From Stylophora pistillata (taxonomy: Eukaryota), in assembly GCF_002571385.2 (NCBI RefSeq), contig NW_019217918.1:124817-188816 (forward strand): DNA of 64,000 bases, in the 5' to 3' direction. Under the pieces are notes generated by a model. That model was not told the DNA's origin, made no database searches, and saw only the letters and a program-made list of their open reading frames with translations. This document shows positions 2,476-20,381 of this stretch, one piece after another. The position numbers and the translations under genes are program-made. Each line of letters begins with the position of its first letter. The stretch's first letter is position 1.

Positions 2476-2799
2476 TCAAGGAAATTTTCCGGTGGATTTC
2501 GACGTGTTCTGTATCACGATAAGTAAATACTCGTGTTCGGGCGCCAGCATTATCTCGAATTTCTTTGTTCGTATCCGGAAAAACTGAATATCGTCAGTAG
2601 GGTCGGTCTCTCTTACTGTACTTTTAGCGATGGCTATTAGTGCGATGCAGTGTTGTACGTAATATGTCGTTTCTGTCGGGCCCAGAGTACTGTGAATCGC
2701 TTGGCCATCTTTGTCGACGATTACCACACCGACGACTTTTTTATGATCTTCGATGCGTTTCAGTACATCCTTAACATCGCTTATTCCACGTTCAGCCAT
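2476..2799 (-). CDS. DYNLRB: Dynein light chain roadblock-type (LC7) protein, 107 aa, intronless CDS
   Basis: MAERGISDVKDVLKRIEDHKKVVGVVIVDKDG...STVRETDPTDDIQFFRIRTKKFEIMLAPEHEYLLIVIQN carries the roadblock/LC7 signature (DP..D..F.RIRTKK.EIM.AP...Y.LIVIQN). ATG at 2799 in an ACAATGG context. Confidence 0.92.
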   Translation of the reverse strand: MAERGISDVKDVLKRIEDHKKVVGVVIVDKDGQAIHSTLGPTETTYYVQHCIALIAIAKSTVRETDPTDDIQFFRIRTKKFEIMLAPEHEYLLIVIQNTSKSTGKFP

Positions 2800-2818
2800 T
2801 GTTTTCACCCAACTTGAC

Positions 2819-2897
2819 CTGTTTGAATGTAAACAAGTGAAATTATAACTTTTTTTTTTCTTCAACAAAGGTTACCCGTTACCAGGATAGCACTTAC
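2819..2897 (-). promoter_or_regulatory. Putative 79-nt 5'UTR intron of the roadblock gene, containing an X-box-like (RFX) motif and a forkhead motif
   Basis: Minus-strand donor AAG|GTAAGT at 2897 and acceptor AAACAG|G at 2819. GTTACCAGGATAGC at 2878-2891 (X-box-like). TGTAAACA at 2828-2835. Confidence 0.5.
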
Positions 2898-4271: not shown

Positions 4272-6974
4272 TTCGGATTATTGTCGTGGATCATCGAAAC
4301 TAGTTCGCCGTAGAGCGAGCGTTCCGAAAACATACTCCAACCTCAGTGATTGAGTTAAAATAAGTAGAACTTAAGAAGAAATGCGTTATGTCATCACTCG
4401 TTTCACCGAGGAAAAAAGAGCAAAAATCCAAACAAAAGGAAAATACTATTTTGAGGCCAACCGTTTAACACCCAGAAGCACTTCCGCCAGCTGTTGGAAG
4501 ACAGCAATTGGTCAGCAAACCTTCCCAGAGTCATTATTAACGATGATTTATATGACACCTTTCTGGCACCAGGCGGACGACGTATTGTTTCGTCATCGAT
4601 GAGGCAGCTGCGGTTGATGAATGAATAACCAGCGTTACATCTCCCTCCCCTCCCCTCCCCTCCCCTCTTCTCCGTTCCCCTCCCAATCTCTACACGCACA
4701 TCGTATTGATTCGTCAGTCTTCGACTTTGGTAAGTATGTATGTGTCATTGAGAAAAACATTTGAAAATCATTCCAGATTTGTATACGCGCACGGCTCAAG
4801 CAGTTCAGTTTATAATGGCTGTTACGCCAGCAAAAACTGAGAAAATGGAGGTAAAATGTGAACACAGAAAAAGTACAGTGAAGAACATTTTTCACTTCTA
4901 CACACTCCTGTGAGTTCATGGAGGATAAAGTTTAAAGTAACGCGGATCCAAATTTGAATGAATAACAAGGTCGGATTGACTGCTGCGCCGAAAAAAAAAG
5001 AAGAGAAGAGCGGGTCGGCAGATTTCCGCATTCGTCTTCACCCTCTCCCTTCTCCTCTTGTCGTTTTCTGGTTTGTGTTTCTCGCTTTGCCTTCGCTTTC
5101 TTTGAGCAAAACGATTCTTACTTCGCCACTCCTAACGTCGATCAAACTGGAAAATGAAACTTTTATTCTGGATTTTGAAGAAAGAAAAGGCGATGAAAGA
5201 GGGAAATTTTTATGGTTGGCCATAGAACCCTCAGCAGTTTCATAACCGTGAATGCTCTCGGATTTTGCGCCTCCTGGTGTCTCAAACTTCGACACGGTTT
5301 ATGTATCGGCACAATGGAGAGGCGCTCTATATAGACTCAGTCATGCCCTCTTAGATGAGACAGTCTACCGCTTTACAGACCAAAAAGAAAGTTGCATGAA
5401 ATTTATTTCCGGTCACAGTTACCTTCGTTAGAGAAATGGAAACTTGCAGGCAATCTTTGAACCGACCTCCTCACCGCAAGTACGTAAGTGCGCCCGCTAG
5501 CCAACATTTGTTACCGCATGCTCAGTCCCGTCGGTTATGTAGGTGAGGAAGTGATCTTTGAGTTACCAACTAGGAGTACTGCTTCGACGTAATATCTTTC
5601 AAAAAGAACGAAAGAAGAAAATAGCCTCCATAATGAAACTATAACAATAGGCAAAGTTTGATATGCTGATATCAGTTATACGGCTTGGATGGCAGCCTTG
5701 GAGAGTATCTGTCTGAATTGATCACGACTTAAAGACAATGTACGGATATTCTAAGGAGTTACAACACGTCAGTCAGTCGTTCTTTCAAGGATTAAGGGCT
5801 AAAAACTATCATCAAAACAATAGCGAAAATACTCAAAGATCACTGTTTGTGACTCCTTGAAAAATGCACAATTCTACAAATTCCAATGCGTAATCGACCA
5901 CGCCCTGAAGTCTAAGCTAAAGGTTGTGTGTATCGCATTTTACAACGACGTTGTTTCATCCAATGATTGTGTGACGTCTCCAAAAAAAAAGAATTTGTCT
6001 TCAGACACACGTATTCGAACTTTCATCGCAAGAAGGTATTTCTTCTGAGTTTTACAAGGCCACTATTTCATTTGATTCGATCAATTCCTGATGTTGAGTA
6101 GATCAGTACTGTCTATGCTCACAGTCCCAGATTTTTTAAGTATTATTAAGTATTTTTAAGTATTATTGGAGTATTATCTTAGTAGTTTCCAAACTCCTGT
6201 TCTGCCGACTCTGGTATCAAGGTTTCATCTGAAAAAAAAAAAAAAAAAACGCTGATAATAGTCCCTGGTTTATTTGGGGTCTTTCGCAGATAATAGTTAA
6301 AAAAAAGTAACATTTTCTTTTTCTTCTGTTTTGTTCTGTCTGTGGAAAAAAAAAAAGGAAGGTATCGATTGCACTGAAAATGATCATTTTTCGTGTAGCG
6401 ATACCAGGTGCAATTGCAGACTAAGCAGAACGTACGCAAAAGGACAAATAAATTAAAATTGACTCTTCTTGTTAGGGACCATAAAAAAAATTGCTTGATT
6501 GAAGAATTTAAAAAAATACGCACAGACATCCTTACTGATGTACGAGTAGGAATGTTAAGTTGTCTTTCTAACAGCTTCTAGATGAAGCCTGCTTTGTTAG
6601 CCTCTCCACTCACGGTTCTTCTATAGCTGTTTCATCTGGCGATTGTGTCTCCTTTTCTTCTATGGGTGACACCTCGGCGCATGCCTCGTGACCTTTGCTT
6701 TAATCCCAGCCAACGAGCGATAGCCCGGTCACTTCTTTTGCCATTTTAATGTTATTATCATTATGATGATGATTATTGTTACTATTATTATCATTGCTTT
6801 TTTTTAGGCAAGTGGAGACAAACAATGGACTAACATGAGGGGCGAGACGCGGGCGACGCGATGGGTACGTGTATTCTAATTTCAGCGCTTATTTCCTCGT
6901 GTGCGCCTTTTGTTCGGGAAACCGATTCCTCCCTGTAAGGCTGTTGCCCACAGTTCCGCAATACATTCTGTTAA

Positions 6975-7087
6975 TCGAGTTTAACTCCGCCTAGATGTCT
7001 CGTAGCGGGAATATCTAGCCGGTCCCAAGCCCGGAAAAAGGAGGAGGGTAGGGTGTGGGGCCAACTGCCCCACCCCACAAAACTCGA
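6975..7087 (+). ncRNA. Twister self-cleaving ribozyme (P1-type permutation), RTE-retrotransposon 5'UTR-like
   Basis: L1 UAA 6982-6984 (predicted cleavage U6982/A6983). P2 CUCC 6985-88/GGAG 7040-43. GCC 6989-91. P3 hairpin 6991-7018. P4 CCGG/CCGG around loop UCCCAAGC 7023-30. GAGGG 7044-48. The core GCCGGUCCCAAGCCCGG and GAGGG match the well-characterised rice twister as I recall it. Confidence 0.9.
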
Positions 7088-7417
7088 CTTCACAACACTC
7101 AAGATAGAGACTTCTCACGCTGAACAAAAACGCGAGTTCTTTCGAGTTATTGAAGAACAAAAAGGTACCTTGTCGTAAATTATTAATTCTAGCAGTTGTA
7201 GGAACTCACTCGCAGCTTTTTTACCGGAACACCCGTCTTCATTCAATACTTTACAGTGGAACGATGGATTCTCCGCAAAGAAGGGAAAATGAAAATTGCT
7301 GTAGGGTATTTAAAATAAATAACAAACTGGTTGGTCAAGCCACTTAATGAATAACTAACCACAAATAAACAAGAAAAGACTGAAATTTAAGAAGAAAAGG
7401 ATAAGACAACGGATGTT

Positions 7418-7443
7418 AAGAAGAAGAAGAAGAAGAAGAAGAA
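7418..7443 (+). repeat. (AAG)n microsatellite = 3' tail of the minus-strand LINE
   Basis: About 8.5 AAG units next to TTTATT (minus-strand AATAAA). Confidence 0.85.
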
Positions 7444-7964
7444 TGGTTTATTCAATACATTAATAGCAGCATGGACTGAACTGTTAAGGTTTACAATGTA
7501 CAGAAGGGGAAATTTTTTAAATATAATTACAAAATTACTTGTATGCTTACAATAAGAATCCTACGACTACGACTACGAATATAAAATTTTAGAATTGGCT
7601 CGGTTGAATTGCTAAAAAAGAACTACATATTTGTTGACGAAAGTGTCACGACACCTATTGGTCTTACATGGCTTTACACGGTATGGTCTAGCATTCCTGA
7701 GGTCCTTAGTTGGTCTCTCGTTGAAAGGAATAAGAGGGTGCAGAACATCAAGGGGGTTATCTAAAATTTTGTTAAAAAGTTTTTTACATATTTCCGTCTT
7801 TCTTTGCTCTAACGTAACGAGGCCTGAACGTGCCAGGGCATCTGCACTTCGTAACTGAAAATTATCCCAAAAGCACGTTTCTGTATTCGTTCAAAACTTA
7901 AGGTAAGATATTGTGGAAGACTAAAATGAAAAACCTGGCAGCCATAAAGTAAAACAGATTGGAT

Positions 7965-8396
7965 CTAACCGCCTCCCGGTTAGCTCAATGGATAGAGCGC
8001 TGGACTGTCGTGCGGGAGGTCGAGGATTCGAGCCCCGGCCGGACCAACACTCAAGGTCTTAAAATAATTGAGAAGAATTTGCTACCTTTCTATAACATCA
8101 AGAAAAGGTTAGATATTCTAGTCTTCTCGGATAGGGACGAATAAATGGAGGTCCCGTCTCCTGCAGGGTTGGGGTAGGAGACGTTAATTTCCCACACACG
8201 AGGTTACTGTGTGATGGATGTCCTCCCCTGGGGTGGGATGGGTGGGAAGGTGAGATCGATAGACTGAAGCGGCTGTCAGAGGCGCCTGATATGCTGACGT
8301 CTGTTCTCAACCTTACACTGCACCCGTAATTCAGCCTCTGGGCTGCAAGTGGTCAGATATAAACTATATAACTAAACTATATAAACTATATAACTA
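7965..8396 (+). mobile_element. tRNA-derived SINE with a Deu/Nin-like central domain, inserted into the LINE
   Basis: A box TAGCTCAATGG and B box GGATTCGAGCCC in a tRNA-like head. Central GGATAGGGACGAATAAATGGAGGTCCCGTCTC...GACGTTAA. LINE-type 3' end TAATTCAGCCTCTGGGCTGCAAG plus an AT-rich repeat tail. 7-bp TSD ATTGGAT at 7958-7964 and 8397-8403. Confidence 0.9.
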
Positions 8397-10288
8397 ATTG
8401 GATGCAAGGAACATAGAACTGAACTAGTTCTTCAGGTGAAACTTTGGCATACTTCAGTTGCGCTAAAAGAAACAGGCGTTTGGAAGCTTTTTTTGTATGA
8501 ATTTTACAACCAGCGATTTCTACAAGTTCATAATTTGTCGGAGGCGTGCGAAGGTTTTCCTAAGCTCATTACATTTACTGGGGTGAAGTTGGAACTTGTT
8601 GTCAACAGACCATGTAGATACCTCTTCGAGGATGGACTGTGCATGACTAGACCCTTTTTTCTACACTATCTCGTAGACTGTAGTATCCCCGTTCGAGGTA
8701 TCTGCACTAAGATCGTTTAGCAGAACGAGGAACAGCCAAGGGCCCAGTTTGGTACCCTGAGAAACCCCTGCACGAACTGAGCGCCATTCGGAAAAGCAGT
8801 CGTGCCCTAGTTTGACTCTTTGCTGCCTTTTGGAGAGAAAGGATGCAATCCAATTCATGATGTAAGGATTAATATCATATTGCAAAAGCTTGGCCATCAA
8901 CAGACTATGACCTATCAAGTCGAACGCCTTCTTATAATCTAGAGTAAAGGCCCTTACACAGTTTCCAGTTCCATCAAGAGCGCGAGTCCAATTATGGAAC
9001 ATGCCAATCAAGGCATGCGTAGTAGAGGAACCCGGGATACATCCAAACTGGTCTGGGCAGAGCTTTTTCAGAACAGGCTTCACATGCTCTTGAACAGCAA
9101 AATGTTCTGCTATTTTCGATAAGGTAGGGGTAAGTGAAATAGGTGTAAGATCTTTCTCGATATCCTCTATGTTGTTAACTTTAGCAAGAGGAGTGACGTT
9201 AGCGTATTTCCAAATTTCAGGCATAGAGCCAGTAATGAAGGATGGATTCAACCGAACAAACTCGGGCTGAACAACTTCAAGAGCAGACTCACGTAATACC
9301 CAGTTTGGGATGTCATCTGGGCCACCTGCTATAGAGGGGGCCCACATGACACTGTTCAACTGAAATAGTTGGAGCCTCATAACCGGATGTGCTAACGTGA
9401 TAGTCATCAGGAATGGGCGAAAAGGCTTGTTGTGGACGTAGAAAGGCTTGATTGATGTCGTTTGCGAGGCGTTTAATATTGTCATCAGTAAAAGGGCTTG
9501 TCAATTAGTAGCTTGTTAGATAAGTCAGATGGTGTTTTCTCATGCCGCAAATGCGTCTGCAGTGTGCCCACCACTGAATTTCTTGTAATTAGGATCTGTA
9601 TCTTTAAACTCATGGACTTTCACTTGGTAATAAGTGGATTGCAGAGTTTTCGTTCTCTGTTCACCATGTTTCGATAGTAGTTGAAAAGCCGTTTGTTGCG
9701 ACTGTGATAGGCTGTTTGTCGCCGCGAGATAAGAGACTTAAGCCTAAGGGAGATCCATGGGGCATCATTTTGGTGGATTTTAACTCGCTTAGTTGGTAAA
9801 ATAGAATCTAGACCAATTTGGATCAGTTCACTAAGAACGGAATATTTATCTTGAACACTGTCCATGGTGTCAATTAAGGACCAATCGAGACCAGTTATAT
9901 ATCGACCAAAGGCCATTTTAGACTCAGAGTTAGAGACCCTTGTACCGATTACTCTTTTTGAAGGGACATTGGTCTTCAAACGGGCCTTGGGACGAAGACC
10001 AAAGGTGCAGTGATCGGATAAGCCAAAGGGTGGAAGATCAGCAGGTGCATTGTAGTAATCACTTAAATTGGTCATAATTTTGTCCAATATACGATTGCCC
10101 CTGATTGGAATTTTGACCACTTGGGAGAGATGGAACTGATTTGTTAACGAAGACACATCAGCTCTGTTGAAGTCACCAGCTAAAATTATACCTGCATTAG
10201 GAGCACTGCTCACTATTTTTAATAGGGAGTCATGTAGATTGGTCAACATGAGATTCTTTGATGTATACACACACACCACCGTGTTGCA

Positions 10289-10431
10289 TAGGTGGTTTGC
10301 ACGTTACGTCATGGCCGCCATGTTGGTGGACGTAAACAATGGACATCTCATTAGCTTCTTTTGTTCGTCCACCAGCATTTGTTCCTTTCACCAGTTACCT
10401 GTGTCTCTAGAGATTGGTTGCAAACCACCTA
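10289..10431. mobile_element. 143-bp MITE inserted in the LINE endonuclease domain
   Basis: 13-bp TIRs TAGGTGGTTTGCA / TGCAAACCACCTA. It separates RKDRSH from QHGGVCVY of the APE domain. Confidence 0.85.
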
Positions 10432-11372
10432 AATGAGATCTATCCTTACGTATCACACTGTAGCCGCTGATATTGATTACGCCGTCGTCAACTAAATTTT
10501 TAAGCGAAGTTTCGGTTCTACAAAATACATCAAATTTCTGATCACCAAGGAAATTTCGAATTTCGTCCATTTTTGGCGCCAGACTCATAACATTAGACAG
10601 AGAAAGGGACGGCATAAAGTTGGATCGAGCGAAGGTTATTTGTGTTGATGAACCTTTGTCTTGGACAATAGTAAGGTATGGCACGATGTGTTATTCTCAC
10701 GGGAACTGTTAAACGCCTTGGTTGATTGTTGTCACTTGATTACGAATAATTATTCAACTGAGAAAACATATCCTACAAGTCAAAATTATTTCTTCTAAAC
10801 GTGGCTGTAAAACTTGATCTTGATTATTTCCCTAATCCCTGCCCGCTTGCCTCGGTACTTGAATAACCCGTTCGAACAAAGTGCTGAGAGGATTGACCGG
10901 TAGTTCTTTCGCAAGGCTATCAGATCTTTTCTTGAGAACGGTAACTTTGGTGTTTGGCGGATATGTAAATGACTCGCAGTGGTACCATCCTGAGACAACT
11001 TGTCGATGTTACTAAAATTAGTTTGGTGTTCTGGAGCCAGACCGGGGCCAGGATTAGAAGGAATATCCATGTACACCGTGATGTCAATAGGTTGGTCTTG
11101 GCCAGGAACAATCAAGGAGACGAACCCGTGTTTGCTGGGCTTTCGAAACGGAATTCTTGTGGTGAAGAAACCTTGTTTGGCGATGTGAAAGCGGCTTGGA
11201 CGAAAAACAGGACTTATAAAATATATATTTACTTTCCTTGCATTGGCTGTTGCATCTTCAGGATATCTAGCGTGGATAACGGGAGCCGAAATGAGGCTCA
11301 AACTACACAAAGAATAAAAAAGATAGCAGAGCAAATTTTGTCGTAGCCGCCATGTTCAGCGCCAATCACGTG

Positions 11373-11592: not shown

Positions 11593-12018
11593 AACTAAAA
11601 GATGTTCAAACCCGAGAAAATTTTTAAGCTTGCACGAGCCACACAAATGGGGCGTAATACTTTAATATGCTTTGGGTGGAGAGGTTTCGTTCTTTTTAAC
11701 ATTGGTGAAATAAAATGCAAGTTAAAGTGAAATTACTGTAACATTGAACGCGCAATTTATTTCAATCAACTTGTCTCCAGTTACACATTCCGCTTCCTCT
11801 GCTTGCCTTGCCTTTCCTTCCCTGTTGCGGCACTTGAAAATGAAAATCGTAACAAAGTGGCAGAGTGCCAGGGAATCGTGCCTCACAATATAACGGTTCA
11901 CTGTCCTTTCCCTTTTTGGGCAAAGAAATACGTCATTCATTACTTCAGTAAAATAAGGTTAAGATAGGTAAGAGGAGCGACGTTAGGTGAAGAAATGAGT
12001 AATCAGACAAAAATTTTT

Positions 12019-12050
12019 TCACTTGGCTGCAGAAATTATCCCAGCAACAC
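12019..12050 (-). CDS. EIF3K: EIF3K coding exon 9 (terminal)
   Basis: TTTTTTTCCAG|GTGTTGCTGGGATAATTTCTGCAGCCAAGTGA = (S)VAGIISAAK*. Confidence 0.88.
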
Positions 12051-15000
12051 CTGGAAAAAAAATGACACTGAATTGAGTTGCTTAGAAGGAAGTACCAACC
12101 AAAACCAACCAACCGAGCAATTACTGGAAAGTGAAAATTTCCTAAAATTTCTAAAAGACTTAACGGTCCAAATAGATAGCAAAACAGAAGCAATTTTGGA
12201 GACTCTTTAAAACACTTACAACAAGTAATTGTCGTGAATATCCTTTGAGTTGCTTGAGTCCTTCTCTTTCGTTAGTTTTTACTAGACTAAAAGTACAGCA
12301 CGTACAGTGCTAATGAGTGTCGAAAAACCAGACCTCAACGAATCATAACAGCCAATCGCAACAAAGCAGTTTTCGCGAAGGCCCATTGCGCAACCCAAAA
12401 CGTTTCCAGTAAAGACTTCAAAAGCTTGAGGAAATAAGTCCAACTACCAAAGGAAACTTTGTTTTTTTTTTCTTTTCCCTGCAACTTTGTTGATGACACC
12501 CCCCCCCCTGATATATTTCATCCAGTTTCCCCGCTGCCCGTCCAGACACATCGACAGAGAAAGGTCTCGTGCGCAGGTAGCCCCGGGACGCAGACACCCT
12601 CGGGTTGTAAAAAGGTTCCCCTGGACAATAGATGGTTGTCTTATGAGAATGCTTTTCATGCACGGCCGTAAATTGCCGCTATAGTGTCACAGTGCCAGGC
12701 TTACAAGAAAGCGTGTGAACAAAGGAGCTGGTTACGGTCTCAAAATTCCCCATAACTGGACAGGAGTCATGACCGATTTTGATACGCGTTTTAGAAGGAC
12801 AATTAAAGAGCGTCTCAATGATATCTACTTCTAACAATGATGACAGGAAAGAACAGTTTTTATCGGAAATAACGTCTGAGGATGAAATCGAAATTTGAGG
12901 GTGCCCTATCTACAATGTTGCAGTATTTGGAAATCTGGCCACTAGCGTCAATAATTCAATATAACTCACTGTCTAAGTCGATTTTCTCTGCAATGTTCTT
13001 GGACTTAATGTGCGCCTCTTGGTTGCTCACAAATACTCTGCCATCTTCTTTAATTGTCCAGTTTTGAGCTTTTATCCACTCGTCCAACTCTTCTCCTGGA
13101 AATAACAAGGAGAAAATTCAAATGAGAGTCAGTGGTCTCACTTTGACTTTATACGGGTTTGGCAACCTGTGAAAGACCAACAACTTATGCAGGAAAAGAA
13201 GGAATGAGGTTAGACATGACGTTTATGGATAACGCGAAACAGCTACTTGATGTTTGACGTTTCCGTCTTCACTTCTTACACCTTAAGCTTCGCGTACTTA
13301 GCAAATTGCTTTTAAAGCAAAGAATAGTACCCAGCTCACGGCTTGGGGTTTTGATAACAGGGATCATGTGAAAATTTATCGGTTTTGACGGTTTTGTATA
13401 CGGTTTTCGGTTTTGCTCTAGTTTTTTCGCGGTTAATGATTACTTTTTTCCTGCGGTTTTGCGGTTTCCAATAGAGACGTGCACAAGCAAAAAGTGATTG
13501 CCTTGGAAGGTTGGGCCACATTTAGAGGAACGGTCAAGTCAAGGAGAGACAATACACAAAATTTATGAAATGTGATTAACAATTTAACTCTTAAAAGTGA
13601 TCGGCTTCTTGTTTCTTCTTACAGTAACAACTGTTAAATCAAACATCGAGACCATAAGAGTAAGGAAAATGATAAAATAAAAATATAAAAAATAAATAGA
13701 CAGTTTAACGTGGAGAAACAGTTAGCTAGAAGCTAGTTTACAGGTTTTCCACCAAACAACTCAAACAAATAATTCAAATTGAAAGTAACATTATTAAGAA
13801 TCCCAACTAGCCGAAGGCAAACCAGTTGGCTATATTACAAGCATGGCCGAGGATTCGAAACTCGGGGCTACCGTGAAACAAATCCGGGCAGAGGTCAGGG
13901 CGGGACTTGAACCCGGGAACGACGGATCACAAGTCCGACACGCTGACCACTCGACCATGCTGCCTTCACCCACCCGAGAAGCTCTTGATTGTCGAACATA
14001 TATTGCCAGTATCATTACCGTGGTAAATGTATAGAGAACAGTATGAGGAATATGGATACCAATCATGGGGTGTTAAGGGTTCATATGGCCTTCTCACTGA
14101 CATTTTCAGGATTGCAGCATTTATTTTCAAAAGATAATTTAAGCATACCAACCTTGAAGACCTCCAAGAAGTTCCGATATGTGGGTTTTATCGATGGTTT
14201 GGTATGTTATTCCTATGACGTAGCTTGCATCTGTATCAAATTTTTATCAAACTTTGATATGAGCTATACATGCAATACATGTAGATCAAACTATGATAAC
14301 TAGTATTCTTAATCTTATCATCATCAATAAGTTTATATGATGATCTGTTTCAAGTATCGATTGTTTGCCTTAACCAGAGTAGAAGCTGTTTGTGAAGTGT
14401 GGCTTTTAGTTTTGCATGTTGTTTTCCAATGGCAGCATTTAAAACCAAATTTTTCAGTACCAGTATATCTGAACACAATTTTCTGTAGTATCCGGTCAAT
14501 TCACCACCACAAAACTCGCCACCGCTCGAAGTCGAATCGCCACCGGTGGAGGTTCTGTTTCGTTTAACGTTCCTTTATTGAGACGCTGCACCTAACTTCT
14601 ATGTTCCTTTCCCTTTTCGCAATATACTACTACACATTACCTTTCATTTGATGTAAGTTTCACACGAGAGGCTACACGTAACGTTTAAGTCAAATCGCCA
14701 CCAGTGGCAACTTGACTTCGAATGGTGGCGAGTTTTGTGGTGGCGAGTATTGCGGTGGCGAGTATTGCGGTGGCGAGTATTGCGGTGGCGAGTATTGTGG
14801 TGGCGAGCTTGCTGTGGTTGCGAATTGACCGTAAACCTTTTCGAACAATTAGTTACTCTTACAAATCTCAAACCATGAAAACAAGTCATTCTTTTCGGCT
14901 ACTCCTCAACCCTTTAATTCCCTTGAGTGACCAAGCCTGGGTTTCTCCTTACAAATTAGTACAATATCAAGCAGAAAAGTGATGAGAATCAAGAGTAATG

Positions 15001-18000
15001 TAAATAAGAGGATCGTTAGTTGATCCAACACCAAATTCTCAGAACTTACAAAAATTGTATAGCAGCAGAGATCGACACTATCTTTTCAAATTACTAGCCA
15101 AGTGGCTAGTGACAACTTATAACGTTACAACAATTTCAGTTAGTTTACCAGCAAAACCGGCTAGTGGAAATCGAAAACCACTTGCCGCAACTGAATTTCT
15201 ACTAGTCTGTGGCTAGTTGGCTACTGTAAGTGTCGAGCCCTGTAGCAGACAGTAGGGAGAATTACAGTTGGGATAAATATTTGCAGTGGAAGGATTGACA
15301 ACAGAGATTAAAATTATATGGTTTCTGGAGCATACTTTTCCTCTGTGAAAATAAATCAGTTGAGGCTGTGATAGTAAAGTATCTTTCATAAATCAGGAAT
15401 TGCTCTGCAGGTGTAAGAATGATGTTTTGAGCAGCAGGCATACATGTCTGACATATGCCCGAGGTGTGAGATTAAGGTAGTTTACCTAAAGAGTGAATGT
15501 GGGAAGTTTCATGAAGTTCTTTAGCAAACTTGTGAAATTATGGGATCCTACACTTGCCATCCATCCAAAAGCGTTTTACCTGTGCTAACAAGTTCTCATT
15601 GCATTACTCACATTTTCTAATTGCATCATGAAATCCTACAATTCCATCAACAAGGGAAGTGTCCTCATTTAGATATTTCTGAAAATGAAATCATTCACAG
15701 GAGTGACTTTTGGTTTAGTTACAGTCAAACCTCAGTTATCTGGACCACAATTATCCAGACTTTTTCTCTGGTCCCAACTTTGTCATGAATATTTATTAGT
15801 CATTACCAAGATCCGTAGCCATATTCTTTTCAAAACCACAGCATTGAAAAGTGAAGTAAAGGCAAGTTTGTTTTGCTTTCAAAAAGCAAAAGCAGCACTT
15901 GCACATGTTTTAACTAATGAAGAACATTCGAATGAGGTTTGATTGGCTTGGAGTTGTTTTGTTGCTATATAAGATTTAACACCTTATTGGCTCATTGAGC
16001 ATGGTGTGCAGGATAAACTTAATTTATTTCTTATTTTTGCAATAAAAGATAAACAGTCTATAATTCTGCAAGAAAGGAGAAAAATATTTATCGCTTTCTT
16101 AATTTAATCATTTTTTTGTTCCTCATTAATTTTCATATTCTCAATTATCCGGACCCTCAATCATCCAGACTATTTCGTCCATTCCTAATGAGTCTGGATA
16201 ATTGAGGTTCGACTGTAATTAATAAGTAAATAATCAGGTTTCTCATTAAATGCCAGTCACTAACTAACAAAACAGCCACTTCAAGCACGATGCTTTACTT
16301 TAAACAAAGTGTCTAAGTTGTGAACAGTAAGTGTTAAAAAAAAGACAATGTAAGTATTGTTACAAAAAGTTTACTAACCTTCAGAAAATTTGTTATCACA
16401 TTCCATAGAATAATTTGCTTTACATTTTCTCTAATCTTAACGTTGCCAAATAAAGCCAAACTGCTTTGCATGCATGAAAATGAGCAAATTAGAATTAAAT
16501 CCTCTAAACCTCCAAATATTTTTTAAGAGAACTCCCCTCCCTCCTAAGGCCTTTTGCCTTTGTTTCAGAAATTAAAAGCCATCTAATTAATGCACAAAGT
16601 CATCAACTCCCTACACCACTGAAAACCATAAATAAATCAGTTTTTGCTTCCATATTGTAATAACTCTTCATAACAATTTATCAAATGTCATTTTATTAAA
16701 ATTTTCAACACAAAGATACAAACAAAGATAATTAAACAACTCTTACCCATGCCTCCAAAAAGTTACATGTTTCCAACAACTCGGCAAGTTTAATGACTCG
16801 TGCTATGGCTTGATCTTGTTGCTATTTTGTAGAGTTAAGGTAGTGTGTATATTATGTTGAAAGTTGCCAGAAAATATAATAAAGAGCATTTATCACTTTT
16901 TAGCCATAAACATTTCTAGTCCTAATCTCTGATCTCATTTTTGGTCATAACTGAAAATCACAGTCTTGTAAAGATGATCTTAACCACTAACCCCCAAGAT
17001 CTGATTGTTAATTCTCCACTTGAGCCACTACACATTTCCTTTTAAATTAGGTATGAGAATTTCTTGTTACCATATTTATTCATCTATAAGCCAAACTCAG
17101 CTATAAGCTAAGACCCTAAACTTCCGTCTGTTTTAATTGGGAAGGTTCTTAAAACATGTAAATTGAAAATACTCGGCTATAAGCTGAGACTATATTCAGA
17201 GAATTCCATTTTCAAACAAACTGATATGAATGTAAAAGTTTCAAAACAGAAAAGTGTTTCAATGCTGTATTGCTGTAAAAAATGGAAAACTTCATAAGCC
17301 TATTGCTTTGATGATTAAAATGAACAAAAGAAAAGCATCTCACTCAGAAAACACACATTTCCGCAGCATTCAATGAGTAAATTAAAACGTATTCAAATTT
17401 TATTGGTAGTTTATTTGAGAACAAAAGAAATCAATTGATCAATTTGATCCAAACAAGGATATAAAACAATGCAAAGGCAGTGCAAATATTCATCTGAGTT
17501 CAGAATCCTGTCTAAAGCTTTCAAAATAATTTGATATCAACAAAGTTGAAATGGTAAATTGGCCACCGTAACGGTGGCCAATTTACCATCTCAACTTTGT
17601 TGATATATTCAAGTTATTTCGTTACCCCCACCGACGCAGCGCCAAACAATTTCTTTAGAAACTATCAGCCTTCAAAGCTTTCAAAGTTGTCCTCATGCTT
17701 TCAAATTGTTCAAAGGTTGTCAATCATCATGCCTAAAGCTCGTCATTGTTCATAGGTAGATCAAGATAACAACTTCTATCTGACAAGTTTAAGTATTCTC
17801 ATGACATGTTTGCTGGATACTGTAACATTCAGATAGTATGGGGATAAGCTTAAGAGATTAACAACGTGCAAGATAATTGTTGTGGTTATCATGCTTAAAA
17901 CATCAAACTTTGTGGGAAAAGTGGCTGCTTTGTTGGTAGAACAAACATAACCTGGATGGATAGAAAGAAAGGAGGGAATCTTACTTATTTAGCCTGGGTC

Positions 18001-20381
18001 TTGAGTCTTACTGTGAAATTGAACAAACCATGAACTTCTTTAAAATATGTCAAAAGTGTTTGTTGCTTTAAGGACAGTTATGATTTGATGTTCTGTTTGG
18101 CTTTAGTGTTTTCACTATTTTGAGTTTTGTAGCAAACAGGATGTCTTTCTGGCTTTGAAAACCTGCAGTGAACAATTTCCAAGTTCTAATGAAATATTAG
18201 TTGTTTCCAAAGTAATGTGATGTAAGCTCATAGGACAAAAGATACATTGGCATCATCAATAAGACATCTGCACATAATGAAGTCAGCATTGGGCAACATC
18301 ATGAGGGCCTTCAATAGAATCTGCATGGTAACTGTTGTTTGATGATATGCAGGATTGAACTGGTACCTAAAAAGAAAAATTAAAAGTTGTTAACACCTGA
18401 CTTAAAACATTCCTAAGTGTTTACAATGTATAAGAAAAAAAAGAAAGGGGGGGAAGGTCTATCTATATTCTGTTATGAGGACAAAACAAGCAAAGTCAAT
18501 AAAGGATTCATTTTATAGCCAAAAATTATACATTAGGCTTACCACAATTGTTTGTATATATTATTTACAATACACTGTTACATCACTCAAGCTTACAAGT
18601 AGACACTGAGCATGTATGAGTACACTTACAACTTCAGAACTGCCAAATTTGCATCCAAATCATAAGCATTGTTGTAGACCTAATGAACAAATCAAAACAC
18701 ATATTAGTTCATGGTCATTTGATAATATGGAAATTTAAGCTATTTTCTCAAGAAGTGTAGGTTGTCACCATAGACCTAGCCTTCTGCAGGTCTCCTTTAG
18801 CTCAGTGCTCATATGTTTCACTCCAACTGGGAGCACCTGGAGTTCTTTTTCCTGGAGCATGCCTGTGTCATCACTGAATCACATCTTCTTTCAAGTGTAG
18901 GTTTATTTTGCAAAGAAAAGGGTTTGGTTATCTTGTCAGTAAGTTGATAAGATACAAAATTTTGTCCAACTTACAAAGTAAATCTAACTCCTTCGGAGGA
19001 GTTTCAACATACTTGCTGATACACCAAGTTTATCTTAAATCAAACTGTCACATTTAATAATTTCTGACTGATAATGGAATTCATTCTGATCTTGAAAATT
19101 GTGCTGTTATGGTTTAACATAAAAATTTTGTTGAATTTGATATTTTCATCTTTCCATACGCATCTTAATCTAAATTCTTTAAGATAAGTTAGTATGGAAA
19201 AAAATTCCATATGGAAAAAAGCTCCCGTGGAGTAGGCAGGGTATGATGGCAGGCTTTTAGCTCTATTTTGGAGGTGTAATCAATTGTTAACTTCTTGGAG
19301 CTGACTAGAGTGTGGTGCAACTGAAAAGTGATGAAATATGAAATGATCCAGTTTTATTTCCTGTTAATATTCTGTTGCTTAAAAAAAGACAAAATTACCA
19401 AAGTTTGTTTATAGCTAATATTGAGGTCAAGGCTGTGCTCTAAGAAAGATTGAAGGAAGCCCATTGCTCCGAAACTGTGAAATCCAGGATGCCCTGCATA
19501 TGCTTTTTATGAAAAAACTAAGATTTCTGAGTTGCCCAAGAGCAAAAGTAAGGTACCAGGGACCACTGAACACTGCTAGACAACAGTCCTAGAGTTTGTT
19601 GTAAACTGCACGAATTTATTTCCACTAACCTTAAAATATCAGCCATATACAAAATACAACCCACAAAATACAACCCACAAATTTTTCATGCTACAGGTTC
19701 CACATTTAATCTATGTACTTTTAGTTACTAGATGAAAGCACTTATAAATTAATTCAATTTAAAACTTAAGTATGGTGGTCAGAATTGACAAGTTTGTGAC
19801 CATAAGCCTTACTTGAAAATGAACATAGCCCTCCAAGTTTGTGAGATTTTCAGGGTTGTATCTGGGAAAAACAAACGAATACATATTTCTTCACAAGCTA
19901 TGTTCCAATATGAGAATCAAATTCTTCTTCAGAGTGACCTCTTCACTTCCACTAGGAGTGTTTTTCAATTTTTGATTCTCATATGTTAATTTTGTAACTA
20001 CAATCACTTCACTTTTGCCGGTCAAAGAACCGTTGTTTGGGTATCATTCATACACCAAATTTTGTCTCATCCTCAATCAGCAACCCCTGAAATTCCCTCT
20101 GAAAGTCTAGTTGTCAATCGACAAAATAAACAAACCGAGGAGTAAATTAGTCAATGGCAAAATCATACATAGAAATAGTTTCAGGGTTTAGAACTCACAC
20201 GTGGGCAGAGAAAAGATTGTCAGACGTCCAAAGTCGGTTTTTAAAACCGGGATCTTTCCACTGATGTCAAGGAACTTATATCTGGCCGTGTTTTTCAAAA
20301 TTAATGGCTAGTGTTTGACTGTACGTACCTATCTATTCCCTTCAAAAGTTGGGCCACCTTCTCTCTCATGTCTTCCGCCAT
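12019..20381 (-). CDS. EIF3K: Eukaryotic translation initiation factor 3 subunit K, 9 coding exons, 216 aa
   Basis: Exons 20381-20329, 19861-19813, 18679-18630, 18366-18246, 16821-16747, 15678-15612, 14230-14153, 13095-12970, 12050-12019 join in phase (651 nt) to give [24 protein letters not shown]...[18 protein letters not shown]...LLETC...VIGITYQ...[23 protein letters not shown]. All introns are GT-AG. PolyA signal at 11756-11761. Confidence 0.96.
12970..13095 (-). CDS. EIF3K: EIF3K coding exon 8
   Basis: (G)[41 protein letters not shown]; TTCCAG acceptor, GTGAGT donor. Confidence 0.93.
13700..13965 (-). mobile_element. tRNA-derived SINE (second family), intronic
   Basis: Minus-strand head GGCAGCATGGTCGAGTGGTCAGCG...GGGTTCAAGTCCC (A and B boxes); body ...CAACTGGTTTGCCTTCGGCTAGTTGGGATTCTTAA. 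Confidence 0.8.
14153..14230 (-). CDS. EIF3K: EIF3K coding exon 7
   Basis: (Y)[25 protein letters not shown]; ACAG acceptor, GTTGGT donor. Confidence 0.92.
14493..14831. mobile_element. Non-autonomous DNA element with TIRs and 15-bp subterminal tandem repeats
   Basis: TIR CGGTCAATTC / GAATTGACCG. Six GGTGGCGAG(TATTGC) units at 14724-14807, with inverted CTCGCCACC-type copies near the left end. Confidence 0.8.
14906..15299. mobile_element. Degenerate TTAACCC-type (piggyBac-like) MITE interrupted by a nested element
   Basis: AACCCTTTAATTCCC...TTTCTCCTTACAA... Related fragments at ~13584-13675 and ~16980-17066/17755-17861. Confidence 0.55.
15066..15242. mobile_element. 177-bp MITE (CAG...CTG termini) nested in another MITE
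   Basis: TIRs CAGAGATCGACACT / AGTGTCGAGCCCTG; flanking duplication TAGCAG at 15060-15065 and 15243-15248. Confidence 0.8.
15612..15678 (-). CDS. EIF3K: EIF3K coding exon 6
   Basis: [22 protein letters not shown]; TTTTCAG acceptor, GTGAGT donor. Confidence 0.92.
15722..16215. mobile_element. Tc1/mariner (pogo/Tigger-like) non-autonomous element
   Basis: TA|CAGTCAAACCTC...GAGGTTCGACTG|TA, with internal repeated TTATCC(G/A)GAC motifs. Confidence 0.85.
16747..16821 (-). CDS. EIF3K: EIF3K coding exon 5
   Basis: [25 protein letters not shown]; preceded by a U12 branch site CCTTAAC. Confidence 0.92.
16822..18245 (-). other. U12-type (minor spliceosome) GT-AG intron in EIF3K
   Basis: 5' splice site GTATCTTTT (consensus GTATCCTTT). 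Branch site CCTTAAC at 16840-16834, 12 nt from the 3' end. No polypyrimidine tract. Confidence 0.85.
17526..17673. mobile_element. Penelope-type terminal-repeat remnant forming a 73-bp palindrome
   Basis: Palindrome at 17534-17606 centred on GGCCACCGT-A-ACGGTGGCC, followed by CCCACCGACGCAGC...TTTCTTTAGAAAC. Flanking direct repeat AAAGCTTTCAAA at 17514-17525 and 17674-17685. Confidence 0.65.
18246..18366 (-). CDS. EIF3K: EIF3K coding exon 4
   Basis: [40 protein letters not shown]; U12-type donor GTATCTTTT. Confidence 0.93.
18630..18679 (-). CDS. EIF3K: EIF3K coding exon 3
   Basis: [16 protein letters not shown](L); TTAG acceptor, GTAAGT donor. Confidence 0.93.
19813..19861 (-). CDS. EIF3K: EIF3K coding exon 2
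   Basis: [16 protein letters not shown]; CCCAG acceptor, GTAAGG donor. Confidence 0.93.
20329..20381 (-). CDS. EIF3K: EIF3K coding exon 1
   Basis: [17 protein letters not shown](R); AAGATGGCG start context; donor AG|GTACGT. Confidence 0.93.

What the first reader, a model, noticed from the sequence alone, without database searches (positions are those of the whole stretch)
6975..7087. Stand-alone, apparently intact twister ribozyme with a rearranged P1 (three-way junction)
Seen in sequence: every core element of a twister can be placed. L1 U6982-A6983-A6984; P2 CUCC/GGAG; T2 pseudoknot G6989-C6990 with G7029-C7030; a 12-bp P3; P4 CCGG/CCGG; L4 UCCCAAGC; general-base G7044; T1 pseudoknot GGG 7046-48 with CCC 7024-26. 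The local P1 pairs poorly. However, UCGAGUU (6975-81) is perfectly complementary to AACUCGA (7081-87) once the hairpin GUGGGGC/GCCCCAC (7055-7073) is looped out. Established: twisters occur in Nematostella and in the 5'UTRs of RTE-clade retrotransposons such as Schistosoma Perere-3, where I recall a similar hairpin following GGAGGAGGG. Inference: no RTE ORF follows here, so this may be a non-autonomous twister-bearing retroelement (retrozyme-like) or an exapted cleavage element, and the long-range P1 may act as a folding switch.
Basis: partly seen in the sequence, partly recalled or inferred. Interest (0 to 1): 0.85.

Follow-up and report, generated by a model that had tools for sequence, protein, structure and literature searches.

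The report
Conserved single-copy twister ribozyme in corals
A complete twister self-cleaving RNA sits as a single copy between two housekeeping genes of a stony coral, is kept at the same spot in at least three other coral lineages while the DNA around it has decayed, and probably still cuts its transcript, so it looks like a transposon part taken over by the host.

Summary
Window 6975-7087 (+) carries every twister element. Rfam twister-P1 scores 64.5 bits (E 1e-14), just under the 67.2 cut-off because the local P1 does not pair.

The hairpin after GGAGGAGGG is a general feature. 50 of 53 distinct related sequences have it, including leaders of RTE-like retrotransposons in metagenome contigs and about 45 twisters inside tyrosine-recombinase-like repeats of this genome. 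The scan had already noted those repeats on other DNA (s1-791398, s1-791422).

The window copy belongs to neither group. Its flanks are unique and no RTE or recombinase gene is nearby. It lies between a Roadblock/LC7 dynein light-chain gene and EIF3K, in the same order as in contigs from three other coral lineages. The 113-nt module is 71-78% identical to those contigs; the flanks are 20-33% (chance level).

PolyA RNA-seq depth jumps from about 0-3 to 50 at 6995, 12 nt past the predicted cut, but the strand was not calibrated.

Verdict: a host-retained twister of RTE-leader origin with a three-way-junction P1, not a retrozyme-like element. Its function is unknown.

The parts
6975..6981 (+). 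5' strand of the long-range P1 (UCGAGUU)
   Evidence: Pairs with 7081-7087. Present in the MFE and centroid folds. Compensatory changes against orthologs, which have UUGUAUU with AAUACGA or AAUAUGA.
6982..6984 (+). L1 UAA; predicted scissile bond between U6982 and A6983
   Evidence: Aligned to the UAA of the Rfam twister-P1 consensus. Invariant in the four orthologs.
6985..6990 (+). P2 5' strand (6985-6988) and T2 5' strand (6989-6990)
   Evidence: P2 is 100% paired and T2 98-100% paired across relatives.
6991..7018 (+). P3 stem-loop (optional twister stem, 12 bp with a bulge)
   Evidence: Fold. Length and sequence vary among orthologs but the helix is kept; 3 of 6 counted pairs are compensatory.
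7019..7034 (+). P4 with loop L4 (UCCCAAGC), which holds the 5' strand of T1 (7024-7026) and the 3' strand of T2 (7029-7030)
   Evidence: Rfam alignment. Invariant in orthologs.
7035..7048 (+). L2 3' strand (AAAAA), P2 3' strand (7040-7043), G7044-A7045, T1 3' strand GGG (7046-7048)
   Evidence: Rfam alignment. T1 is 98.7-100% paired across relatives.
7051..7076 (+). Hairpin inserted between T1 and the 3' strand of P1 (10 bp with bulged U7054, loop CAACU)
   Evidence: Fold. A hairpin of at least 6 bp starting within 5 nt (mostly 2 nt) after the T1 GGG occurs in 50 of 53 distinct related sequences, median z -2.4. 8 of 10 pairs are compensatory in alignment A1.
7081..7087 (+). 3' strand of the long-range P1 (AACUCGA)
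   Evidence: As for 6975-6981. Homology to all relatives ends at 7082-7090.
6995..7420 (+). Region covered at about 50x in polyA RNA-seq contigs; taken as the 3' cleavage product (strand inferred, not calibrated)
   Evidence: The X3 contig covers 6995 to beyond 7420 at depth 49.6 and starts directly after an adapter, while upstream depth is 0-2.8. The five X23 reads all have the first mate on the minus strand. Unique in the genome.
7419..7443 (-). Purine-rich microsatellite that is the 3' tail of a minus-strand non-LTR element, not the end of a twister-led unit
   Evidence: Other copies of the same element also end in such a repeat and diverge beyond it.
7422..11350 (-). Minus-strand non-LTR retrotransposon inserted between the twister and EIF3K; it carries a 404-bp high-copy repeat at 7966-8369
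   Evidence: RVT_1 at 8661-9485 and endonuclease at 9620-10279. Repeat structure. The 5' limit is approximate.
2476..2868 (-). Roadblock/LC7 dynein light-chain gene, upstream syntenic anchor
   Evidence: Pfam PF03259, E 2e-17. 89% identical to a Pocillopora meandrina protein. Collinear with L088 832-1205.
11980..19863 (-). EIF3K exons, downstream syntenic anchor; the last coding exon ends with a stop at 12019-12021 and a candidate polyA signal lies near 11755-11760
   Evidence: Eight exon-sized blocks match the spliced contig L104. The L104 ORF is CSN8_PSD8_EIF3K, E 2e-33. Sequence read. The window's exons were not joined.

Best explanation
This is a structurally complete type-P1 twister ribozyme. 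Its P1 is interrupted: the strand just 5' of the cleavage site pairs with a strand that lies after an extra hairpin, which gives a three-way junction.

The module (twister plus hairpin plus A-rich tract) is the same one that leads RTE-like non-LTR retrotransposons. Here it is a single-copy, host-retained remnant in the spacer between a Roadblock/LC7 gene and the 3' end of EIF3K, and it points towards EIF3K.

Most likely a plus-strand transcript of that spacer cuts itself between U6982 and A6983. The downstream piece, with the folded ribozyme and hairpin at its 5'-hydroxyl end, persists as a short polyadenylated non-coding RNA. In the ancestral arrangement that RNA was antisense to the EIF3K 3' region.

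Shown: the sequence and structure, covariation, single-copy status, synteny, the conservation island, and an RNA-depth step 12 nt from the predicted cut. Inferred: self-cleavage itself, the strand of the RNA, origin from an RTE leader, and any effect on EIF3K or on transcription across the spacer.
For: - Rfam twister-P1 64.5 bits, E 1e-14, full model. The orthologs score 63.6-68.1, and one passes the cut-off.
- The 3WJ is in the MFE and centroid folds, z -3.65.
- On seven P3-bearing relatives the whole structure is 91.6% paired, against 36-52% when partners are slid. P1 is 83% paired, with 3 of 7 pairs changed on both sides.
- The hairpin is present in 50 of 53 distinct sequences.
- RTE link: 16 contigs have an APE+RT(+DUF6451) ORF directly after the module.
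- Single copy: the flanks are unique, only three intact P3-bearing twisters exist in the genome, and no RTE or recombinase genes lie around it.
- Synteny: Roadblock, then twister, then EIF3K, collinear with L088/L094/L100 and L062/L082.
- Island: the module is 71-78% identical to orthologs and the flanks 20-33%. Between L088 and L062 the figures are 84% and 59-63%.
- RNA: depth 0-2.8 upstream and 49.6 from 6995, with the contig starting at an adapter. All five stranded reads (not independent fragments) have the orientation expected for plus-strand RNA in the common library type.
- The EIF3K polyA signal lies 4.7 kb away, before the inserted LINE.
Against: - No cleavage assay was done.
- The strand of the RNA-seq signal rests on five reads and on an assumed library type. 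It could not be calibrated on a known gene.
- The depth step is at 6995, not 6983.
- A random-primed run has a contig across the cut site, 6798-7109, which is either uncleaved RNA or DNA.
- The metagenome search required an exact twister core, so lineages that lost the ribozyme could not be seen.
- The taxa of the orthologous contigs are inferred only from protein identity.
- G.U versus A.C counts do not settle which strand is structured.
- In RTE-linked copies the long-range P1 is mostly absent, so P1 may be dispensable.
Confidence: 0.6

Rival explanations
1. Neutral relic. An old RTE 5' end, or a fragment of one, that happens still to be intact. It has no host role, and the RNA step has another cause.
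For: The module is homologous to RTE leaders. Other solitary copies in this genome are decaying: the copy at C1:639387 has lost UAA.
Against: A retrotransposed RTE copy would not keep only its first 105 nt, and no RTE ORF is detectable even at protein level. The P1 5' strand lies outside the RTE RNA yet covaries. The module is kept in four lineages whose flanks are at chance identity.
Confidence: 0.12
2. The hairpin, not a long-range helix, closes the ribozyme. It stacks under T1 as a built-in substitute for P1, and the 7-bp complementarity in the window is incidental or auxiliary.
For: In RTE-linked copies the nucleotides 5' of the cut come from the insertion site, often with no U at -1, and show no helix beyond the cross-control (own mean 3.8 bp, control 3.1). 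Yet the hairpin is nearly universal. Published work reports truncated twisters without P1 that still cleave (PMC8501958, section 17; PMC7761336).
Against: Seven Watson-Crick pairs next to U-1 have a 0.5% random expectation. Two pairs are changed on both sides and one on one side between the window and its orthologs, at aligned positions. The helix is present in both the MFE and centroid folds.
Confidence: 0.25
3. The conserved island and the RNA signal belong to the minus strand, for example a 3'-end or downstream element of EIF3K transcripts. The twister shape would then be an inherited by-product.
For: The spliced EIF3K contig L104 runs on through about 985 nt after the stop codon to the twister core. 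In L088 and L062 an AATAAA on the minus strand abuts the P1 3' strand. G.U counts (8) hardly exceed A.C counts (6).
Against: The invariant positions are exactly the twister's catalytic and pseudoknot nucleotides. The window species has its EIF3K polyA signal at about 11755 and a 4-kb LINE in between, yet it keeps the module. There is no TTTATT near 6995 and no T-run between the adapter and 6995. L104 is chimeric at the core.
Confidence: 0.08
4. A non-autonomous, twister-bearing retroelement (retrozyme-like or SINE-like).
For: Several metagenome contigs carry the module without an RTE ORF in the sequence available.
Against: The flanks are unique in a 398-Mb assembly. There are no tandem units. 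The microsatellite at 7419-7443 belongs to the neighbouring LINE. The contigs 'without ORF' that are closest to the window are orthologous single-copy loci.
Confidence: 0.03

Closest known systems
Type-P1 twister ribozyme (Rfam RF03160; Roth et al. 2014, not readable here)
   Same: All conserved core nucleotides, P2, P4, optional P3, and pseudoknots T1 and T2. The full-length model match has E 1e-14.
   Different: The four local P1 pairs of the model are not formed. A covarying hairpin separates T1 from the real P1 3' strand, so the score falls 2.7 bits short of the curated cut-off. Whether this hairpin was drawn in the original consensus could not be checked.
T-variant twisters at the 5' end of Perere-3 / RTE retrotransposons (Liu et al. 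2021, PMC8501958; remark in PMC7761336)
   Same: The same module. The published '3' P1' UUGG is the start of the hairpin seen here. Metagenome contigs show the module 6-330 nt upstream of about 1030-aa APE+RT ORFs, with copies that begin at the cut site or are 5'-truncated.
   Different: The window copy is single-copy, has no ORF, has an element-independent and covarying P1 5' strand, and sits at a syntenic host locus.
Host-conserved self-cleaving ribozymes of animals: the CPEB3 HDV-like ribozyme and the intronic hammerheads of amniotes (from my own knowledge, not checked here)
   Same: A small ribozyme kept at one orthologous, non-repeated locus across species.
   Different: A different ribozyme class. 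It is intergenic and convergent with a gene rather than intronic. I found no report of a syntenically conserved twister in the held library.
Twisters inside tyrosine-recombinase-like repeats of the same genome
   Same: The same core, the same UUGG-hairpin, and an A-rich strand after it that can pair with the U-rich strand before the cut.
   Different: Those lack P3 and are about 45 copies in roughly 4.2-kb units, often tandem. They lie in the sense orientation, 320-480 nt after the last ORF of the unit.

Membership tests
twister-P1 (Rfam RF03160) | Covariance-model score at or above the curated gathering score (67.2 bits) | tested here: not met
   64.5 bits, E 1e-14. The shortfall is explained by the unpaired local P1. 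Ortholog L055 reaches 68.1 bits.
twister-P1 (Rfam RF03160) | Conserved core nucleotides (UAA in L1, GCC, L4 UCCCAAGC, AAA, GAGGG) | tested here: met
   All upper-case consensus positions match except one U-to-A change in L2, which scores positively in the alignment. These positions are invariant in the four orthologs.
twister-P1 (Rfam RF03160) | Helices P2 and P4 and the two pseudoknots T1 and T2 | tested here: met
   All pairs are formed in the window. They are 98-100% paired in 25 and in 7 relatives.
twister-P1 (Rfam RF03160) | P1 helix closing the ribozyme next to the cleavage site | tested here: inconclusive
   The local P1 is not formed. A 7-bp P1 forms with a strand 32 nt further on, with covariation. 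It is absent in most RTE-linked relatives.
twister-P1 (Rfam RF03160) | Site-specific self-cleavage at the U-A step | not testable with these tools
   The only evidence is indirect: an RNA-seq depth step 12 nt downstream of the site.
RTE / Perere-3 5' twister (T-variant) | Lies directly upstream of an APE+RT ORF of the element, in sense | tested here: not met
   tblastn of five RTE ORFs against the whole window finds only a distant RT on the opposite strand.
RTE / Perere-3 5' twister (T-variant) | Multi-copy, with element homology starting at the cut site and unrelated upstream flanks | tested here: not met
   Single copy. Among orthologs the conserved block starts 7 nt before the cut.
Retrozyme-like circular-RNA element | Repeated or tandem units bounded by ribozymes, with target-site duplications | tested here: not met
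   One ribozyme, unique flanks, and no repeat of 7088-7418.

The most novel reading that the evidence does not exclude
This would be the first twister ribozyme with a conserved host, non-transposon role in animals. The reading is that an RTE-leader module was exapted in an ancestor of several scleractinian lineages. It is kept at the boundary of the EIF3K transcription unit, where self-cleavage either creates a stable 5'-OH antisense non-coding RNA or cuts plus-strand transcripts before they run head-on into EIF3K. The hairpin-interrupted P1 would be the native architecture of the whole RTE-type twister lineage, and the published 'UUGG P1' would be a misreading of that hairpin.
Probability: 0.4. 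Interest if true: 0.75.

Novelty: new variant of a known kind. Interest (0 to 1): 0.62.

Why it matters
Twisters are abundant, but the only function shown so far is 5' processing of one schistosome retrotransposon family.

A single-copy twister kept at one orthologous locus across coral lineages, with flanks at chance identity, gives a case where host-level selection on a twister can be tested directly. The possible tests are a cleavage assay, 5'-OH RNA mapping, and comparative covariation.

The work also revises the anatomy of RTE-type twisters. What has been read as a weak 4-nt P1 strand is the start of a conserved hairpin. A true P1, where present, forms with a strand beyond it. This explains why curated models score these ribozymes below threshold.

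Tried and rejected
- **Rfam threshold.** At the gathering threshold Rfam finds nothing in the window. The hit appears only with the E-value threshold.
- **Repeated element.** I looked for copies of the flanks in the genome. Only a low-complexity AT-rich tract (6746-6805), the LINE and a 404-bp repeat match elsewhere.
- **Transposon genes near the window.** I looked for traces of tyrosine-recombinase-element genes and RTE genes. None were found, even at E 20.
- **Other solitary copies.** I checked C54, C182 and C1 for a shared context. One abuts a convergent beta-helix ORF, the others have no ORFs, and none shows synteny in the contigs at hand.
- **RNAalifold on 36 hairpin regions.** It returned only three pairs, because stem registers differ between subfamilies. 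I replaced it with per-sequence folding.
- **Anchored-helix statistic in the recombinase-repeat subfamilies.** It is confounded by U-rich and A-rich composition (cross-control reaches 5 bp or more in 48%), so I do not count those subfamilies as strong P1 evidence.
- **G.U versus A.C counts.** They do not decide the strand.
- **Recombinase-like ORF.** Sequence search against solved structures gave nothing, and Pfam gave nothing. Only motif reading and a language-model look-alike (0.92) point to a tyrosine recombinase.
- **Sources not available.** Roth et al. 2014 is not held, and the Perere-3 paper has no supplements held.
- **Suspect contigs.** L077 and L104 are probably assembly chimeras joined through the identical twister core. 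I used them with that caveat.
- **Exons.** The window's EIF3K exons were compared block by block and were not joined.

Full report
**1. Observation**

The stretch 6975-7087 contains every twister element at the coordinates given.
- Rfam's twister-P1 model matches 6978-7052 end to end at 64.5 bits, E 1e-14.
- This is 2.7 bits under the curated cut-off, so the default scan shows nothing.
- The deficit comes from the model's four local P1 pairs, which are not formed.
That alternative is 6975-6981 pairing with 7081-7087 around a looped-out hairpin, which extends to ten pairs with a bulged U7054. The z-score is -3.65.
- A random 5' strand gives such an anchored 7-bp helix in 0.5% of trials.

**2. 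Twisters in this genome**

The assembly is 398 Mb in 5513 contigs. Run labels and earlier notes call it a coral. Its Roadblock protein is 89% identical to one from Pocillopora meandrina.

The genome holds about 50 twisters.
- About 45 lack P3 (29 by exact pattern). They sit in roughly 4.2-kb units, often tandem. Each unit has four ORFs in the same sense as the twister, and the ribozyme lies 320-480 nt after the last ORF.
- One of those ORFs reads like a tyrosine recombinase. It has no Pfam or PDB match, and only a language-model look-alike supports the reading.
- Only three intact P3-bearing twisters exist: the window copy, C54 and C182.
- C182 and C2470 have an ordinary local P1 and no hairpin.

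**3. The hairpin**

In all the other copies the letters after GGAGGAGGG are UUGG followed by a stem-loop whose sequence changes while pairing is kept.
- On 25 genomic copies the named structure is 86.5% paired, against 36-56% when partners are slid. In the hairpin, 8 of 10 pairs are changed on both sides.
- A scan of metagenome contigs for the core plus UUGG gave 60 contigs.
- Of 53 distinct sequences from both sources, 50 fold into a hairpin of at least 6 bp that starts within 5 nt (mostly 2 nt) after T1. The median z is -2.4.

**4. Link to RTE elements**

- In 16 of those contigs an ORF follows directly in sense. Where complete it is about 1030 aa and has APE endonuclease, RVT_1 and DUF6451 domains.
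- Copies of one family share sequence only from the A after the cut site, or are 5'-truncated, and their upstream flanks are unrelated. One contig starts exactly at that A.
- This matches the published role of twister variants at the 5' end of Perere-3, where the 3' P1 is given as UUGG (PMC8501958). It also matches a remark on RTE elements in PMC7761336.
I could not check schistosome sequences themselves.
- In these RTE copies the long-range P1 is generally absent (own mean 3.8 bp, cross-control 3.1).

**5. The window copy is not such an element**

- Homology to every relative is confined to 6980-7090.
- The flanks are unique in the genome.
- No RTE or recombinase-element protein is detectable on either side.
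- Downstream, at 7419-7443, begins the tail of a minus-strand non-LTR element. Other copies of that element end in the same kind of microsatellite.

**6. Synteny**

The closest relatives share a P3 of the form CUAGA...UCUAG. They are contigs L088/L094/L100/L070, L062/L082/L098/L099 and L055/L061.
- These are collinear with one another over several kb on both sides of the twister, at 59-87% identity.
- They are also collinear with the window. The shared blocks are the Roadblock/LC7 gene and small blocks near it, then the twister, then the last exon of EIF3K.
- Contig L104 is a spliced EIF3K sequence. It maps to eight exon-sized blocks of the window on the minus strand.
- The L088 Roadblock protein is only 78% identical to Pocillopora's and 75% to Porites's. 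These contigs therefore come from other coral lineages.
- The conservation profile is as follows.

| Comparison | Module 6975-7087 | Flanks, 400 nt each side |
|---|---|---|
| Window vs L088, L062, L055 | 71-78% | 20-33% (chance level for a forced alignment) |
| L088 vs L062 | 84% | 59-63% |

- All catalytic and pseudoknot positions are invariant. P3 varies in length.
- Between the window and its orthologs, two P1 pairs change on both sides and one on one side (UCGAGUU with AACUCGA against UUGUAUU with AAUACGA).
- The orthologs score 63.6-68.1 bits with Rfam.
- Caveat: the search pattern demanded an intact core, so lineages that lost the ribozyme were invisible.

**7. RNA**

Public runs of the same organism hold part of the stretch. 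Reads and contigs from four runs were laid on it.
- A polyA library has depth 0-2.8 upstream and 49.6 from 6995 to beyond 7420. The contig begins directly after an adapter, with no T-run.
- The five raw reads of a 2026 stranded-type run all lie between 6964 and 7420 with the first mate on the minus strand. In the usual library type this means plus-strand RNA.
- A random-primed run has a low-depth contig across the cut site.
- The EIF3K polyA signal of this species lies near 11755, before the inserted LINE. The signal at 6995-7420 is therefore unlikely to be the EIF3K 3' UTR.
- A step 12 nt from the predicted cut is what a 5' end at A6983 would give after the usual loss of terminal nucleotides in library making. 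That last point is my inference.
- The strand was not calibrated and the read numbers are tiny.

**8. Reading**

The best-supported account is a host-retained twister of RTE-leader origin with a hairpin-interrupted P1. It cleaves a plus-strand spacer transcript that runs towards EIF3K. Its biological role is open; candidates are a stable antisense RNA, or protection of EIF3K from convergent transcription. I found no paper on a syntenically conserved twister, or on twisters in recombinase-type elements, in the held library.

**9. Known versus new**

The ribozyme class and its RTE link are known. Three things appear to be new:
- the three-way-junction anatomy, supported by covariation;
- the general hairpin after T1;
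- the single-copy, syntenic, conserved locus.

Earlier notes of this scan had already seen the recombinase-repeat twisters on other pieces of this genome. I confirmed their gene order and the ribozyme position.

Noticed in passing
G000 contigs C1651, C483, C1445, C476, C737, C1202 (loci L037-L040, L044-L046): About 45 P3-less twisters lie in roughly 4.2-kb units, often tandem. The gene order is 226-aa ORF, 314-aa ORF, 445-aa tyrosine-recombinase-like ORF, 134-aa ORF, then the twister, all in one sense. Some array-first copies have the twister ahead of the first ORF with a different shared upstream flank and a CTTGAG direct repeat on both sides. A self-cleaving ribozyme in what looks like a Crypton-like DNA element is unexplained, and I found no paper on it.
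   Followed up: partly
L063:1-50 (metagenome contig): This contig, which carries a full RTE-like ORF, begins exactly at the A after the twister cut site. That is what an RNA-derived contig of a cleaved transcript, or a full-length insertion, would look like.
   Followed up: no
L077 and L104 (metagenome contigs): Both look like assembly chimeras joined through the 31-nt identical twister core. L077 has the upstream of the L055 locus followed by the RTE of L111. L104 has the flank of an RTE copy followed by a spliced EIF3K sequence.
   Followed up: partly
L088 and L062, just 3' of the P1 3' strand: A TTTATT on the twister strand (AATAAA on the EIF3K strand) directly abuts the module in two orthologs but not in the window. 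EIF3K mRNAs of those species may therefore end inside the antisense of the ribozyme.
   Followed up: no
window 7966-8369: A 404-bp repeat with more than 40 copies at 95-99% identity, inserted in the minus-strand LINE. Its first bases resemble a tRNA arm, but ARAGORN calls no tRNA.
   Followed up: partly
G000:C1:639387-639465 (L012/L041): A solitary P3-bearing twister with the hairpin, but with UAA changed to ACA at the cut site. It is a dead copy and a useful contrast to the intact window copy.
   Followed up: partly
window 2476-2868 (-): This Roadblock/LC7 gene evolves fast for its family: 89% identity to Pocillopora and 68-78% to other corals. It may be a lineage-specific paralog.
   Followed up: no
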